Shown here piece by piece: positions 29,771-36,605 of a stretch of 64,000 nucleotides of DNA (position 1 is the first letter of the stretch; each line of letters starts with the position of its first letter). The stretch is from assembly GCA_950097015.1 (NCBI GenBank), contig CATNEN010000037.1, positions 1,550,001 to 1,614,000 on the forward strand. The letters run 5' to 3'. The notes below the pieces were generated by a model, which was not told the DNA's origin, did no database searches, and saw nothing but the letters and a program-made list of their open reading frames with translations. Both the position numbers and the translations under genes were made by a program. The DNA comes from Macrostomum hystrix. Taxonomy: Eukaryota > Animalia > Platyhelminthes.

Positions 29771-31572
29771 GCTATTAGGCCTTCATATCTTAAATTTATT
29801 GTTTAATTCAAGACAACAAATTTAAATTAGCATTTAACAATGAGCAAAGTTAAGTTTAAGAAGTAACTAAAATCTGGGCTTAAAAAGCTTATTAATGTAT
29901 AGGTCCTCGAATCTATGTTTTGAGTGTTTATTGTAATTGCTTGCTATTAGGCCCAATCCTATCATACCAGTAAGAATAAGCTAGTGATCAGGCATTCTGG
30001 CATCTAAGTTAGCAAATGCAAGTGTATTTTTTGTCTGTAGCTGCAATAAAGCATATATAAATGTTCAATGTTATCTGATTAATTTAAATTCAAATTATAT
30101 GTGAATTTACTAATACTCATTTCTTCACCACTAGCTTTTGCATACTAGGTGACTTGCAATTCAACTTGCAAGCTAAAAAATCTGTATTGTGAGATCACAA
30201 ATTTGAGCTACATCACACATTTTTACTACTCAGGAAAAATAATAAAGACAAAAAAATAACATGAATCTATAGGCCCAAAACTTAAATATTTAGTCACCTT
30301 GCTTTCCGTTTTTTAATCATTATTATTTAAATTTACTTTTTGAGCTTTATGCTTTTTCTTACTATTTAGCTAGTATTTATTTGTAACATTTCATATATTT
30401 CCAACACTCTATGTTTGTTTCTAACATGCAACACTTAGTCTTCTGCCTTTAGTTTATTTGAACAGCCATATCTAACAAATTCAATAGGTGTTATAATGAA
30501 GTTATCAGGCCAAGTGGTAGTCAATTAGTCCCCGACCGAAAATAAATGTCCTCTCAAAAACAGTAAGTGTGCCAGTTGTGCCACAAATATGCCCTTTGGC
30601 ACAGTTATAACTGTCTTTGTCTGTCCTGTTTGGCACAAGTGGCACAAATAACCTTTTGTACGATAATTGCCCATTGAAACCAATTGGCACACTTGGCACA
30701 CTTGTAACAAATGTGCCAGTTGTGCCACAGCTATGCCCTTTTGCACAGTTGTAAATGTCTTTGTCTGTCCCTCTTGGCACATTTAACATTGTTATTGCTA
30801 ATTGACCACGAAAACCAATTGGCACGTACTTGGCGCACTTGTAACAAATGTGCCCGTTGTGCCACAAATATGCTCTTTGGCACAGTTATAACTGTCTTTG
30901 TCTGTCCTCTTTGTGCTCACCAGGCATAGTAAACAAAGCTTATATTTTAGGTACGAAATATATAATTGACTGTTTGTTTGCCAGTACGAGCTATCTCGGC
31001 CTTGGCTTGTTATTTTTGCTCTCTTGCTGAATAGTTGGCTATAGACGAAATGTCGGGGGTGTGGGGGCAGAGCCCCCACTGGGGGTGTGGGGGCGAAGCC
31101 CCAACATGGTACTGCCATAGACAAATCATTAAGAAATCATTAAGAAAAAGAAAGAAAAGGAAGACTATACGTTTAATCGGCCTAGGCCGTTAAATGACTG
31201 GCTTAGGCCAGTTAAATGAAAATACACTGTGGAGATAGGCAACTAGCTGGGCCAAGCTGGGGATTAAATAAGGTTACATCACTGTTGCCTTATCAGACAA
31301 TCAGACAGAACGAATATTTTATTTAGGGAGTACATGATTCGTATTGAATATCTGCACACTAATCCAATTTATTGCAGTGCAACAAAACAATGCAGTGCTG
31401 CAAGTGCCACGCAACGGCAACTATTTTGTGCCACACGTGCACCATCACTGGGGACGTGTTGCTATGTGACGAGCATTACAATGCATACCACGTTCCAGCG
31501 ATGCGACACCTCACAAGCCGTCTACCTGCCGTGCCCGTGCATGGAGTGCCAGCAACGTCCATCGTCGCCACT

Positions 31573-31675
31573 GGTGGGGGAGCTTTCGCGACCCCGAGCG
31601 CGCCTGGCGCGCTTCCCAATGCTGCCGCCTTCACGTGGCGGGACCGTCCGGACATACCCCCGGCGAAGTGCAGCG
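31573..31675 (+). ncRNA. Putative HDV/CPEB3-like self-cleaving ribozyme at the LINE 5' end
   Basis: P2 GCUGC 31621-25 / GCAGC 31670-74; P3 GCC/GGC closing L3 UUCACGU 31630-36; GU 31646-47; P4 CCGG 31648-51 / CCGG 31660-63; J4/2 CGAA 31664-67. P1 must be split (GGU 31573-75 plus CCC 31615-17, pairing with GGGACC 31640-45). Confidence 0.7.
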
Positions 31676-31740
31676 CTCACCCTGGACATCGTCTGGGGAC
31701 AGGACACCTCGGGTTTTTCCCAGCTGGACCAGCCTCACCG

Positions 31741-31797
31741 GCTCACCTGGCCCAGCTGCTCCTCCGAGCCGGCGACGTGGAGACCAACCCTGGGCCA
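31741..31797 (+). other. 2A-like StopGo peptide AHLAQLLLRAGDVETNPGP
   Basis: Exact D-V-E-x-N-P-G-P consensus, in frame just upstream of the APE domain. Confidence 0.9.
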
Positions 31798-34700
31798 CCA
31801 ACGTCGTACTCATGCGGTGGCTGCAGCACTAACGTCCACAGCTTTCACATTTTACAACTTAACGCCGCCGGCCTCCGCGCCCGTAAGCTCGAACTCCTCC
31901 ATTTCCTCGAGGCCAAGTCCATCGATGTCGCCTGTGTTCAGGAGACGAATTTGACGGCGACCGGGTCCCTCCCAAGACTGCCGGGCTGGCAATTTGCCGC
32001 CTGCAGGGACCGTCGAGCCAATCGCGCTGGCGAGCCGGCGGAGACGCCGCACGGCGGAGTCTGCTTCCTGATCAAAGAAGGTATCGACTTCTCCGAGATC
32101 CAGATGCCACCCCCCAAGGCTGTCAACTCGGCCACGGAAGCCTCCGCGGTCACTATTCACGACCCGCGTATCGGCCGCCCACTCTCGATCATTAACCTCT
32201 ATATCCCACCGGTCCGTGCAGGAGACGGACGGGTCAGCGACTTCGAACCAGACTGGCTCCCATCCGGCCCCGACACCGTTATCCTCGGCGACATTAACGC
32301 GCACCACGGGATGTGGGACGAGAGCTGCGAGACCGACGACGCCCTGGGGACCGAGTTCGAAAACTGGGCCACGACGTTCGACTACGTCGCGCTTAACGAT
32401 GGCTCCTTCACCAGAATCAGCCCCAGAGGCCTGACCAGCGCCCCGGACGTGACCTTTGTCCCGGCCAACTGGCAAGACCGGATGACCTGGAAGACGGAGG
32501 CACACATCGGATCCGACCATCTCCCTATCGTTATCGAGATTCGAAACAGCTCCAAGAGGCCCCCTAAGCAGAAACGGGTGACCCGCTTCGCCTACCATAA
32601 GGCAGACTGGACCCTATTCCGCGAGCTCATTTCCGAAGAACTCAAGCATTGGCAGCATCGCCCACCACGCTCGGTCGCTGGTGCAACCGATAAACTGAAC
32701 CACGCCATCCGTTCAGCCGCTCGAGGAGCGATTCCGCAGGGCTCGCGCCGAGCCCCAGTAGCATGGTGGTGCCCTGAGGCCGAAGCTGCGTGCACCGCCA
32801 GACGTCAGGCCCTCGAAGCTCTCCGCACGGATCCTGACAATGACGAGCTCGCCGCGGCGTATCAAGCCGCGGGTGCTTTCGCCACCGCGTCCATCCGTAG
32901 GGCCAAGGAGGCACTCTGGCAAGAATTCATATCCGACAACTACAATAAACTGGACTCGGCCGCGATCTGGAGAATAATTCGAGTTCTCGACGGGCGGACA
33001 CCGGCGGCCTGAACATCCGCAGCCATCAAGGACTCGGCCAACCGCTGCGCCACCACGAACTCACAAAAGGCCAACCTTTTCTGTAGAGAGTACGCAACAA
33101 TCGCGCAACTTCCTAAAGACAAAGTGCGGGACCACACAGTCAAACTTGAGGCCAGAAGAGCCCTTGATGAGCCCTGTGCGTGCAACGGACAACGCCTGGG
33201 AATGTGTGCTGACTTCGACCTAGAGGCGCTCACCCAAGCCCTCCGCGCCATCCCGAGCCGGTCCGCCCCAGGGCTAGACGGGATTTCCAACTTGATGCTG
33301 AAGAATCTGCCGCCAAAGGGGATCGAGCTCCTCCTCTTCAACATCAACCTTTCTTGGCGTAGCGGCCAGTGTTGCGCTGCCTGGAAAATCGGCGACATCA
33401 GGACGATACACAAGCCTAGGAAAAGCCCGGACGCGACCTCCAGCTACCGCCCTATCTGCCTCGGAAAGTCGCGGAACGTCTGGTTAACGAACGCCTCACA
33501 CACTACCTGGAGTCCGAGAACCTCATCCACCCGGCCCAGGCCGGCTTCCGCCGCGGTCGCTCTACCGAAGAGCAGATTGCCGCGGCATCCCAGTACGTCT
33601 TCGACGGCTTCCAGAAGAAAAAACCGGCAAACCGTACAGCGATGCTGTTTGGGGACTTCTCACATGCATACGAGTGCATGTGGCGACAGGCCCTCATCGC
33701 TAAGTTACGCCGTAAGAAAGTCCCGACCTGCACGCGCCGCTGGATTCACTCGCATATCTCCGATCGACGTGCCATTGTGACCTGGGACGGCAATCAGAGC
33801 CCCCAACGCCTCTTCCCTGAGGGCCTCCCCCAAGGCTCCGTCATCGCCCCGACTCTGTGGACGGTGTTCGTCGATGACCTGTTGGAGGATGCCCCAGAGG
33901 ACATCTTCTCTCTGGCGTACGCCGACGATACGACCTTTGGCGCACAAGGCACGAATTTGAAGACCTGTGAAGCAAGACTGCAAAGCGCGGCGAACTGGCT
34001 CGTCGTGTGGTGCACGACTTGGAAAGTCGACCTGAACAAATCCAAAACAGTCGTCACCTACTTCTCCCTCGACCCACGTGAGACAAACGGCAAGGCGAGA
34101 CCAAATATCAGACTCGGAGACATGCCAGCCCCATTCGAGGAACACCCCAAGATGCTGGGCGTGTACCTCGATTCACAGCTCACGTTCCGCCACCATGCGG
34201 CGGTCCAAAAGCGCAACCTGCAGAAGCGGACAGGCGCCCTGAGGTGCCTTGCTGGTCGAGACTGGGGGCGCGACCCGAGATCTCTCAGACAGCTTTACCG
34301 CACCTACGCGGAAGCGGCGGTCCTACACGGCGCCTCCTCTTGGATGAGCTTTGCGTCCGACGCCTGCCGCCGGGAAGTTGAGACCCAGCACCTCGCCGCA
34401 GCGCGCGTTATCTCGGGGTGCTGCCGATCCACCCCGACTGCCGCGCTCCTCAAAGAGGCCGGACTGGCTCCACTCAACACCTCGGCTACGGCCGCTGCGG
34501 CTACGCTGATGGAGAAAACCCGGCGAGCAAGACAACAGACACCGCTCAGAACGCTGGCCGAACTCGACGTTCAACCGAGAATCCGCGCTCACGGCAACCA
34601 CGGCGATTTCAGACGCAACTGGAGGACGGAGGCCAACGGCCTGATCGCCCGCGCGGGCCTCGCGGGATCCAAGCGCGAACCTGACAACGTGCCACCGCCT

Positions 34701-36605
34701 CCCCTATCGCCTAACGACAGGATCCACTTCGCAGCGGAACTCGCCAAACCGACCAACCGGGAGGATCCCCCGCACGTCAGACGCCAAGCCGCACTGGAGA
34801 CGCTGGACCGGCTTCCGGAACCCGCCTTGGAACTCCGGACCGATGGCTCGGCCTCCGGAGGCACCAATAGAGGCAGATCCGGTGCGGCCCTGTTTATCCG
34901 CGGAGCCGCGCCAATCTACCTGACTGCTCCAGCGGGCGCGTTCAGCTCTTCTTTTAGGGCGGAGGAGTGTGCCCTCCGCATTGGTCTCCTCGCAGCCCTG
35001 GAGCGCGTCCCATGGCCCGGTACGGCAGAACTGCGTTGCGCCACTGATTCGCAGGCCCTCATCCGATCGCTCGAACAAGGCACGCACTCTCACCTGTCCC
35101 CCTGCGGCCGGGACATCTGGCGCCTCCTCCTCAAAGTCCCTGCGGACCACCACGTGACTATCCAATGGGTCCCAGGACACTGTGACCTGAGGCGCAACGA
35201 TCTGGCGGACAACCTCGCAAAAGACGCCGCCAGACTCCCACAAGACCAAGCGGAAATCGACCTAAACAGTGCCAAGTCCGCGATCCGCCGCACACTGGCC
35301 GCCGAGGCTCGCGCTGCCTACGAAGCGGACCCACACTGCCGGACGCACCGCGCTGCCTTCCGCGAAGACCGCAGGTCCGAGGCGACTCTCAGCAGACGCG
35401 AGTTGATCACGCTAGTGCAACTTCGCACGGGCCACTCGCCTCTGCTGGCCCAGTACCGCCACCGGATTGACCAAGAACAGCCCGCGTCCTGCGGGCACTG
35501 CGGACACCAGGAGGAGGACCTGAAGCATGTGATGCTGGAATGCCCAGCTCACGCCCAGACCCGCAACCGCGTCCTCGGCCCTAACCCGACGCTGGCCATC
35601 CTATCCGACGACGGCCCCCGTGTCCTGTCCTATCTCTAGGCGATAGGGTTGCTGACCCGACGCCCGGACCTGCACGGCCAGGAACTTCTAACTAACTAAC
35701 TGGCGGCCCTGGGACCGAAATCCTCGACGCAGGTCGAGAAAGCGCTATTGCGGCTGGTGTAGAAGTGTCTCATGGGAGAGTCAGTGACTCTCCCATGCAC
35801 GAAGTGCCAGCAACTGCCAATGGTCCGTCGCCGGTTGACGTCCGGAATGCATACCACGCCGCTATGTGTGTCCACATCCGGCGACAGGAGCCATATCAGT
35901 GCCTTGTAAGGCCGCCCGCCGTAAGCGTGATAGACAACGTCGTGTGGCGGGAGCGTTACAGTCAGCTCATACGGATAATAAAACAGCAACGCGAAGCTGG
36001 CTGCGCTTTTACTTGCTTCGATTTCGCAGTGCGTTCGACTGCCAATCACCTGGTGGCATGCGGACAGCTGCGGCGCCTGGCTATGCACGAGCAGCCTCCA
36101 AACCTGCCAACCGAGCTGGCAGATGCGCTCGCGGAAGCAAGCAGTTCTGTGGCTGCCGCTCGTGCAGACCAGTCAATGCAGAAGCCGTCATTGACACCGG
36201 TTTCCGTGCGGGCCTCGCATACCGCTGCATTGTGCTAGCGGTGCTAGCAATCGAGTTGCAATATTACTCGCTGATGTAGACTCATGTGCAAACCTACACT
36301 GTTACATGTTGACAGAATATCTCTTGTATTGCTGTTGTATCCGGCGGTACTGTTGTAATAGGGGCGTTTATATGAAAGGCTCGAGTTTTCGTTGTATGTC
36401 GAAGATCGGTTGCGATCGGAGTTAGTTAGACCGTAGGCACAGACAGAGCAGTTCTGCCTGTCTACCCTCTGTACCCACGAGTCACGAGAATGTTTATATA
36501 AGTTTATATATAAGTTTATACAATAGAAACAACAATTTCAACAATCTCGCACGGACGGACTCCGGGAAATGACAATGTATTCGTTGTTCCCATTCCAGTC
36601 AACAC

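What the first reader, a model, noticed from the sequence alone, without database searches (positions are those of the whole stretch)
31676..31860. AUG-less leader plus 2A StopGo peptide defining the LINE protein's N-terminus
Seen: there is no in-frame ATG from 31573 through LLLRAGDVETNPG|P, and APE begins shortly after. Known: DxExNPGP causes ribosomal skipping and occurs in APE-type LINEs, and HDV-like folds have been reported to support LINE translation initiation. Inference: a coupled system in which self-cleavage makes an uncapped 5' end, initiation is non-AUG, and 2A trims the product to a uniform Pro-start polyprotein.
Basis: partly seen in the sequence, partly recalled or inferred. Interest (0 to 1): 0.75.

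Follow-up and report, generated by a model that had tools for sequence, protein, structure and literature searches.

The report
AUG-less ribozyme-plus-2A LINE leader
A young but broken flatworm jumping gene (LINE) carries a hepatitis-delta-type self-cutting RNA fold, then a leader with no in-frame start codon, then a textbook viral-type 2A "skip" peptide in front of its enzymes; this layout was known as a pair only from trypanosome elements, and here it hints at start-codon-independent translation.

Summary
Frame 1 has no ATG from the LINE's 5' junction (31573/31575) to LLLRAGDVETNPG|P (31756-31797), and the endonuclease starts about 15 codons later. The in-frame ATGs further upstream (31390, 31501) belong to the host transposon ORF that the LINE interrupted.

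The 2A motif is not chance. Relatives carry it at the same place.

A model built only from relatives finds one hepatitis-delta-like (HDV-like) ribozyme in the window, at 31611-31675 (E 1e-7). Compensatory base changes support its fold.

In relatives the ribozyme is the first base of the element. Here 38 extra bases precede it and its first helix (P1) is weakened. This copy either starts at a split-P1 cleavage site or lacks about 24 bases.

Other copies of the family share the ATG-less leader. Among 11 relatives' and window ribozyme-to-2A leaders, 5 have no in-frame ATG, 2 have one only inside the ribozyme, and 4 have one beside a conserved U-run. That U-run sits about 40 nt after the ribozyme and about 75 nt before NPGP.

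Cleavage, the start site and skipping remain untested. This copy is dead (stop at 33010, 13-nt deletion at 33462). Other notes of this scan report the same ribozyme, ATG-less frame and 2A combination elsewhere in this genome.

The parts
31570..31574 (+). 5' copy of the target-site duplication ACTGG. The last GG may instead be the first two bases of the LINE.
   Evidence: Empty-site joint 31569->35699 with 5 ambiguous bases in runs X1 and X3.
31573..31610 (+). 5' extension ahead of the canonical ribozyme start. It folds into two hairpins: GGGG/CCCC and GCGCGC/GCGCGC.
   Evidence: Shared by other copies: X1 record 4 aligns from 31573 with 3 mismatches in 390 nt. Fold energy -22.3 kcal/mol. Absent from relatives, whose element starts at P1.
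31611..31675 (+). HDV-like ribozyme core. P1 31611-16, P2 31620-25, P3 31627-29, L3 UUCACGU 31630-36, P3' 31637-39, P1' 31640-45, P1.1 31646-47, P4 31648-51/31660-63, J4/2 CGAAGU 31664-69 (candidate catalytic C at 31664), P2' 31670-75.
   Evidence: The only hit in the window of a covariance model built from six relatives: 38.5 bits, E 1.3e-7. On the 10-sequence alignment 95.8% of cells pair and 14 of 19 pairs show compensatory change. P1 has one C-C mismatch.
31619..31621 (+). The only ATG of the leader. It is +1 relative to the 2A frame and lies in the J1/2-P2 strand of the ribozyme.
31676..31755 (+). Post-ribozyme leader, open in the 2A frame, with no ATG. It contains the conserved U-run GGGTTTTTCCCAG (31711-31723). 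In-frame near-cognate CTG codons lie at 31693 and 31747.
31756..31797 (+). 2A (StopGo) core LLLRAGDVETNPG|P. The predicted skip lies between the Gly codon 31792-94 and the Pro codon 31795-97.
   Evidence: The same motif sits at the same place in relatives.
31798..31842 (+). Linker with SYSCGGCS. This is the remnant of the PHD finger that relatives carry between 2A and endonuclease.
   Evidence: Alignment with L001 shows an ~86-residue PHD-containing block missing here.
31828..32520 (+). AP endonuclease domain.
   Evidence: Pfam PF03372 and PF14529.
33010..33012 (+). Premature stop TAA, private to this copy.
   Evidence: Other copies read A at 33010 in all four runs (table 3).
33462..33463 (+). 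Site of a 13-nt deletion (frameshift), private to this copy.
   Evidence: Contigs of X1, X3 and X8 carry 12+1 extra bases here (table 4).
33642..35639 (+). Last ORF piece: reverse transcriptase, RNase H and a C-terminal Cys/His motif.
   Evidence: Pfam RVT_1, RNase_H, and a weak zf-RVT match.
35640..35698 (+). 3' UTR ending in (CTAA)n.
   Evidence: Other copies end at 35696-35701.
35699..35703 (+). 3' copy of the target-site duplication ACTGG.

Best explanation
What it is: the stretch is the leader and 2A peptide of a young, single-ORF LINE (endonuclease, reverse transcriptase, RNase H). The LINE inserted into another transposon's ORF.

Build of the family: the 5' region carries an HDV-like self-cleaving ribozyme. 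About 40 nt further on comes a conserved U-run. About 25 codons after that comes a canonical 2A. There is no in-frame AUG from the RNA 5' end to the 2A.

Most likely mechanism (inferred, not shown):
1. The element is transcribed by read-through.
2. The ribozyme trims the 5' end.
3. Ribosomes start without an AUG near the U-run, helped by the structured ribozyme.
4. The 2A releases the short, possibly heterogeneous leader, so the enzyme polyprotein begins with Pro.

This particular copy is dead. It has a stop codon and a 13-nt deletion, a weakened P1, and possibly ~24 nt missing at its 5' end.
For: - The LINE's limits and its copy-specific lesions come from contigs of public runs.
- Domains come from Pfam.
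- The 2A motif is unique in the window and not expected by chance. It sits where Odon et al. place LINE 2As.
- The ribozyme is found by a model built from relatives only (E 1.3e-7). Covariation supports it: 14/19 pairs compensatory, 0/500 shuffles reach the observed values, and pairing falls to 37-55% when partners are slid.
- In relatives the ribozyme's first base abuts flanking DNA.
- Other copies of this family are ~99% identical and share the same leader. So the ATG-less state is not private to this copy.
- Leaders of 10 relatives and the window: 5 of 11 have no in-frame ATG, 2 have one only inside the ribozyme, and 4 have one within ~25 nt of the U-run.
- The U-run lies 38-45 nt after the ribozyme in 9 of 11 and 72-77 nt before the N codon in 10 of 11.
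- Its first Phe codon is UUU in all 11, although UUC is preferred 2-3:1 elsewhere in these ORFs.
- Six annelid-type relatives keep an in-frame GUG right before the U-run.
- Literature: HDV-like ribozymes promote initiation on LINE RNAs. L1Tc combines a ribozyme and a 2A. L1 ORF2 starts AUG-independently.
Against: - No RNA run holds the element, so no 5' end, start site or product is known.
- Rfam's own HDV-type models do not hit.
- The canonical P1 pairs poorly here (-2.5 kcal/mol), and 38 nt lie upstream of it. Cleavage at the canonical site cannot be what produced these copies.
- The true 5' end is unresolved. A longer extension with an AUG cannot be excluded: X1 record 4 runs 342 nt further, and its last 10 codons are open in frame.
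- The window has no near-cognate codon right at the U-run. The nearest in-frame CUG is 21 nt upstream, in a poor context.
- Many more distant full-length relatives begin with Met.
Confidence: 0.5

Rival explanations
1. The ATG-less leader is an artefact of incompleteness or decay. Master copies would carry an in-frame AUG, either in a 5' extension missing from this copy or through a variant that puts ATG 31619 in frame.
For: - Contigs of other copies run on upstream of 31573. The loose ends in X1 and X3 match at 25 of 30 bases, differ only by transitions, and are open in the 2A frame.
- The upstream CGGUCUG pairs with P1' at -8.6 kcal/mol, so this copy may be truncated.
- One X3 contig has an extra C after 31656, which would put ATG 31619 in frame.
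- Odon et al. warn that 5' truncation removes LINE start codons.
- Distant relatives start with Met.
Against: - The 30 upstream bases that can be seen contain no ATG.
- Relatives' elements begin at the ribozyme, so a long coding extension would be atypical.
- The extra-C contig (depth 99) is matched in depth by a contig (depth 102.6) with further indels that take the 2A out of frame, so both probably come from one decayed copy.
- Three to four copies in X3 and one to two in X1 share the ATG-less leader.
- L069, L009, L064 and L012 have mapped 5' ends and also lack an in-frame ATG.
Confidence: 0.28
2. Translation starts at the out-of-frame AUG 31619 and reaches the 2A frame by recoding or processing. 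One route is a -1 frameshift on G_GGU_UUU (31711-17), which is in register with that AUG and is followed 4 nt later by a stable hairpin. Another is removal of a 56-nt intron (GU at 31668 to AG at 31723).
For: - The heptamer fits the X_XXY_YYZ pattern in the frame of AUG 31619, and that frame is open up to it.
- The downstream hairpin folds at -18.6 kcal/mol.
- The U-run plus YAG resembles a 3' splice site.
Against: - Each coincidence has roughly a one-in-three prior.
- Relatives without an in-frame ATG show no matching arrangement. L069 has no ATG in any frame.
- The candidate donor GAA|GUGCAG is weak and is not conserved.
- A spliced-leader acceptor at 31723 would be out of frame.
Confidence: 0.07
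3. The element borrows a start codon from whatever lies upstream. Because the frame is open to the 5' end, uncleaved read-through transcripts would be translated from a host AUG, as at this locus, where the host ORF's ATG 31390 is in frame.
For: - The 2A frame has no stop from the ribozyme start to NPGP in 9 of 11 leaders.
- At this locus the host ORF is in frame with the LINE.
Against: - Within the short, GC-rich ribozyme, stops are rare in all frames, so the open frame says little.
- A ribozyme at the 5' end argues for removal of upstream RNA.
- An in-frame host AUG would be present at only a minority of insertions.
- L020, L061 and L029 have in-frame stops followed by their own AUG.
Confidence: 0.05
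4. The NPGP motif is an inert relic or a chance match and does not cause skipping.
For: Close relatives carry altered cores (DIHPNPGP, DIHPHPGP). Changes at the Glu position have been reported as inactivating.
Against: - The window's core is fully canonical (D-V-E-T-N-P-G-P), with the Leu-rich upstream part.
- It is unique in the window, against 0 in 200 shuffles.
- Its position is conserved across many families.
Confidence: 0.03

Closest known systems
L1Tc / ingi elements of trypanosomatids (Pr77 HDV-like ribozyme plus 2A plus APE-RT-RNase H single ORF)
   Same: An HDV-like ribozyme in the 5' region, a 2A directly ahead of the endonuclease, and one ORF with APE, RT, RNase H and a C-terminal Cys/His motif. 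A cap-independent, IRES-like start has been proposed for it.
   Different: The host here is a metazoan (a flatworm; relatives come from invertebrate-derived metagenome contigs). There is no sequence similarity to Pr77, and Rfam finds nothing. This family has 38+ nt ahead of the canonical P1 and no in-frame AUG. Clade membership by RT phylogeny was not tested.
2A-bearing APE-type LINEs of metazoans (Odon et al. 2013: Rex1, CR1, L2, Crack, Ingi clades)
   Same: [quoted passage not shown] ORF1 is absent.
   Different: No 5' ribozyme was described for those elements, and their starts were taken as Met. Here the ribozyme, the fixed spacing and the frequent lack of an AUG are added.
R2 and other ribozyme-terminated LINEs (Eickbush 2010; Ruminski 2011)
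   Same: A 5' HDV-like ribozyme releases the element RNA from a co-transcript and has been reported to promote translation initiation. From memory (George and Eickbush 1999), Drosophila R2 ORFs also lack a conserved AUG.
   Different: R2 has a restriction-like endonuclease, is rDNA-specific and has no 2A.
CPEB3 / HDV ribozymes
   Same: The nested double-pseudoknot layout and a J4/2 of the C-G-A-A type. From memory, the L3 loop UUCACGU is identical to that of the CPEB3 ribozyme.
   Different: No Rfam hit. P1 is weakened or relocated. Catalysis is untested.
AUG-independent translation of mammalian L1 ORF2 (Alisch 2006)
   Same: A LINE enzyme ORF translated without need of its AUG.
   Different: There it depends on an upstream ORF1 (termination-reinitiation). 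Here there is no ORF1.

Membership tests
2A / StopGo peptides | C-terminal motif D(V/I)ExNPG|P | tested here: met
   DVETNPGP at 31774-31797. It is the only match in six frames, against 0 in 200 shuffles.
2A / StopGo peptides | About 20-30 upstream residues of suitable (Leu-rich) character in the same frame | tested here: met
   The sequence reads GFFPAGPASPAHLAQLLLRAG. The same ~30-residue module is conserved in relatives.
2A / StopGo peptides | Co-translational skipping of the Gly-Pro bond | not testable with these tools
   Needs a reporter assay.
2A-bearing APE-type LINEs | [quoted passage not shown] | tested here: met
   APE begins ~15 codons after the 2A. No ORF1 lies between the 5' junction and the 2A.
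HDV-like self-cleaving ribozymes | Nested double pseudoknot: P1, P2, P3, P4 in the order P1-P2-P3-P3'-P1'-P4-P4'-P2' | tested here: met
   Model hit at E 1.3e-7. 95.8% of cells pair, and 14/19 pairs are compensatory across 10 sequences.
HDV-like self-cleaving ribozymes | Intact 6-7 bp P1 starting at the cleavage site, which is the element's first base | tested here: inconclusive
   The canonical P1 (31611-16) has a C-C mismatch, pairs at only -2.5 kcal/mol and lies 38 nt inside the copy. It could be rescued by a split P1 (31573-74 plus UCCC), or by CGGUCUG in a 24-nt extension seen in other copies (-8.6 kcal/mol).
HDV-like self-cleaving ribozymes | Catalytic C in J4/2 | tested here: met
   C31664 lies in CGAAGU and aligns with the C(A/G)AA of all relatives.
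HDV-like self-cleaving ribozymes | Match to a curated Rfam HDV-type family | tested here: not met
   No hit at gathering score, and none up to E 10 in 31200-32000.
HDV-like self-cleaving ribozymes | Self-cleavage | not testable with these tools
   Needs in vitro transcription.
Ingi / L1Tc clade of LINEs | RT phylogeny placing it in the clade | not tested
   No labelled reference sequences were at hand. Only the domain order APE-RT-RNase H agrees.

The most novel reading that the evidence does not exclude
A compact start module of metazoan LINEs. The 5' HDV-like ribozyme would both trim the RNA and place ribosomes at a fixed distance (~40 nt, at a conserved U-run), where they start with or without an AUG. 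The 2A then discards the variable leader, so every enzyme molecule begins with the same proline.
Probability: 0.3. Interest if true: 0.8.

Novelty: new variant of a known kind. Interest (0 to 1): 0.55.

Why it matters
How ribozyme-processed, uncapped LINE RNAs get translated is an open question. This family and its relatives offer a natural series to test it:
- The same ribozyme, U-run and 2A spacing occurs with an AUG in some families, a GUG in others, and neither in this one.
- That series makes ribozyme-assisted, AUG-independent initiation directly testable with reporters.
- The relatives extend the ribozyme-plus-2A cassette from trypanosome elements to animals.
- They also give a set of covarying HDV-like ribozymes that Rfam does not detect.

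Tried and rejected
- Rfam found nothing, both at gathering score on the whole window and at E<=10 on 31200-32000.
- A first strict HDV descriptor, applied by eye and by script, gave only a poor hit. The fold became clear only after relatives were fetched.
- The leader's minimum-free-energy fold is unremarkable (z -1.1).
- The word-based protein search found no close kin. The window holds no second copy.
- The family's full-length 5' end could not be fetched.
- A relaxed descriptor hits six other places in the window. All are AT-rich with mismatches, and I judged them chance.
- Spliced-leader trans-splicing at UUUUUCCCAG| (31723) would supply a terminal AUG. From memory, flatworm spliced leaders end in AUG. 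I rejected this for the window because the junction is out of frame.
- The J4/2 AUG seen in several distant ribozymes is not consistently in frame.
- The conserved "leader peptide" (AAFTWRDRP..PAK.S) looked like coding conservation. It is explained instead as the ribozyme core read as protein.
- The Ruminski 2011 paper itself is not held, so I cite it only through reviews.
Full report
**The element.** Window 31573/5-35698 (+ strand) is a non-LTR retrotransposon.
- Pfam finds Exo_endo_phos / Exo_endo_phos_2, RVT_1 and RNase_H, plus a weak zf-RVT match.
- Its reading frame is broken by a TAA at 33010-12 and by a frameshift near 33462.
- Contigs of four public runs were laid on 30900-36400. At those two places the other copies read A at 33010 and carry 13 extra bases at 33462/3. 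Both lesions are therefore private to this copy.
- Other copies are about 99% identical: 3 mismatches in 390 nt, 17 in 1506, and 42 in 3769.
- The same contigs give an "empty site". Position 31569 joins 35699 with 5 ambiguous bases. That is a target-site duplication ACTGG (31570-74 and 35699-703).
- The 3' end is (CTAA)n.
I could not check that, because run names are coded.

**The observation.**
- Frame 1 reads ...GHLGFFPAGPASPAHLAQLLLRAGDVETNPGPPTSYSCGGCSTNVHSFHILQLN....
- There is no in-frame ATG between 31573 and the 2A. The only ATG there (31619) is in the +1 frame.
- D[VI]ExNPGP occurs once in six frames of the window and never in 200 shuffles.
- The in-frame ATGs at 31390 and 31501 are host sequence. 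With the LINE removed, that ORF runs on in frame from 35699 to 36238. The LINE happens to sit in frame inside the Cys-rich ORF of the surrounding transposon.

**Relatives.**
- An exhaustive protein search gave no near-identical protein. It found thousands of relatives.
- The closest is 50% identical and lies on a metagenome contig (L001).
- Full-length relatives at about 35% identity have the same build. They start with Met, then a leader of 15-95 residues, then a 2A (...AGD[VI]ExNPGP), then APE-RT-RNase H.
- A scan of metagenome contigs returned 80 loci. Many carry LLLLAGDIHPNPGP, then a PHD finger, then APE.
- The window's family keeps only SYSCGGCS of that PHD finger.
- This placement of the 2A is what Odon et al. 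(PMC3708506) described for metazoan LINEs. They also warn that 5' truncation can remove the true start codon.

**The ribozyme.**
- In the relatives, the sequence between the flanking DNA and the 2A begins with a hepatitis-delta-like fold: P1, P2, P3, L3, P3', P1', P4, J4/2 (C-A/G-A-A), P2'. P1's first base sits exactly where AT-rich flank gives way to the element.
- I built a covariance model from six relatives only (A4).
- Over the whole window, both strands, it gave one hit: 31611-31675, 38.5 bits, E 1.3e-7, covering the full model.
- I then counted pairs on the model-fitted alignment of ten sequences, with P1 written as a pseudoknot. 95.8% of cells form standard pairs, and 14 of 19 pairs show changes on both sides. 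No shuffle out of 500 reached the observed values. Sliding the partners drops pairing to 37-55%. The alignment is fitted to the model, which favours pairing, but the slid controls are not.
- Rfam does not see this ribozyme.

**The window's ribozyme is odd in one respect.**
- Its canonical P1 (31611-16, GCUUCC) meets P1' (31640-45, GGGACC) with a C-C mismatch and only -2.5 kcal/mol.
- 38 nt (31573-31610) lie upstream of it. They fold into two hairpins, and other copies share them. Cleavage at the canonical site therefore cannot have produced these copies.
G31573-G31574 pair with C31644-C31645, and UCCC pairs with GGGA. That puts cleavage exactly at 31573.
- The other repair uses sequence upstream of 31573 in other copies. 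The loose end in X1 contains CGGUCUG, which pairs with GGGACCG at -8.6 kcal/mol. That is as good as a relative's P1 (-7.5).
- This upstream segment (CUGGGCGACCA) also resembles the P1-J-P2 segment of relatives (CUGUGCGACCA). L001 carries a tandem duplicate of that segment.
- Under the second repair the window copy lacks about 24 nt and its ribozyme is disabled.
- Against the second repair: a second X3 contig has an unrelated sequence before 31573, and the X3 version of the extension has transitions that break this P1.
- I leave the two models at roughly even odds. In neither does the RNA gain an in-frame AUG.

**Is the ATG-less leader real?**
- Within the family, contigs covering 31573-31860 differ from the window only at 31654/55 and 31847. 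They amount to about three copies' worth of depth in X3 and one to two in X1. Only the best-supported 40 of 126 differences were shown.
- One contig of about half single-copy depth has an extra C after 31656, which would put ATG 31619 in frame. A contig of matching depth then has -1 at 31764 and -2 at 31836, which take the 2A out of frame. Together they look like one decayed copy.
- Across families I parsed 11 ribozyme-to-2A leaders, the window included.
  - In-frame ATG after the ribozyme: L001, L014, L020, L061. L029, parsed separately, has one too.
  - In-frame ATG only inside the ribozyme: L007, L015.
  - No in-frame ATG: L009, L012, L064, L069 and the window.
  - L069, a sister of L001, has no ATG in any frame.
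- The lack of an AUG therefore recurs in elements whose 5' ends are fixed by their ribozymes. It is not universal.

**A conserved landmark.**
- All 11 leaders have a U-run (GUUUUUG or GUUUUUC). It lies 38-45 nt after the ribozyme in nine of them and 72-77 nt before the Asn codon in ten.
- Where an AUG exists, it lies within about 25 nt of the U-run.
- The six annelid-type sequences keep an in-frame GUG just before it.
- The first Phe codon there is UUU in all 11, although UUC is preferred 2-3:1 in these ORFs. That points to an RNA-level constraint.
- The amino-acid similarity further upstream (AAFTWRDRP..PAK.S) is the ribozyme core read as protein. It is not evidence of translation.
- Stop-codon counts are uninformative inside the GC-rich ribozyme.

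**Mechanism.**
- Shown: the element's build, the ribozyme homology and covariation, the canonical 2A, and the absence of an in-frame AUG in the sampled family.
- Inferred: read-through transcription, self-cleavage, a non-AUG or ribozyme-assisted start near the U-run, and 2A release of a leader of about 30 residues.
- Literature support:
  - HDV-like ribozymes promote initiation on LINE RNAs (Ruminski 2011, via PMC6765202 and PMC13725137).
  - L1Tc pairs a 5' HDV-like ribozyme with a 2A and is thought to start cap-independently (PMC5814959).
  - L1 ORF2 starts AUG-independently.
- A weak point for the window: there is no near-cognate codon right at the U-run. The nearest in-frame CUG (31693) has a poor context.

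**Rivals.**
- An AUG lies in an unseen 5' extension or in a variant master copy.
- AUG 31619 is used together with a -1 frameshift on G_GGU_UUU, or with a 56-nt intron. Each fits the frame, but neither recurs in relatives.
- Translation starts at upstream host AUGs on uncleaved read-through RNA.

**Novelty and context.**
- Each part is known. The ribozyme-plus-2A pairing is known from trypanosomatid L1Tc/ingi.
- Added here are a metazoan family and relatives with mapped, covarying ribozymes, fixed ribozyme-to-U-run-to-2A spacing, and a frequent lack of an AUG.
- Other notes of this scan report the same trio at other places in this genome (s1-286118, s1-291390, s1-327319, s1-316760). I did not test those copies.

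Noticed in passing
window 31390-31572 and 35699-36238: The LINE sits in frame inside a Cys-rich ORF (MQCCKCH...) of the surrounding EnSpm-like transposon. Without the LINE that ORF is continuous, about 240 residues. Contigs without the LINE exist in two runs; they may be empty alleles or other copies of the transposon.
   Followed up: partly
window 31804-31827; L001 515-760: Relatives have a PHD finger between the 2A and the endonuclease. This family keeps only its first Cys pair (SYSCGGCS), having lost about 86 residues.
   Followed up: partly
L007, L009, L015, L064, L001, L069 and others (2A cores): The closest relatives carry DIH(P/L)(N/H)PGP, with His in place of the Glu of DxExNPGP. Whether these still skip is unknown.
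   Followed up: no
window 31711-31723 and the matching place in 10 relatives: A conserved U-run, usually followed by YAG, resembles a 3' splice site or a pyrimidine tract ahead of a start codon. It lies at a fixed distance from both the ribozyme and the 2A.
   Followed up: partly
L001 217-264: Exact tandem duplication of the ribozyme's first ~21 nt (the P1-J-P2 strand plus 6 nt before it) at the element's 5' end. It suggests template jumping at 5' ends in this LINE clade.
   Followed up: no
window 31656, 31764, 31836-37, 31866-31926 (contigs of run X3): Contigs of about half single-copy depth (99-116), possibly one diverged copy, have indels of +1, -1, -2 and -61. Their sum (-63) keeps the overall frame but takes the 2A core out of frame.
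   Followed up: partly
window 35771-35797: A 27-nt near-perfect palindrome in the host transposon, just 3' of the insertion.
   Followed up: no
L012 189-212 and 441-482: One relative carries two 2A-like cores in tandem in the same frame (DIEPNPGP and DINPNPGP).
   Followed up: no
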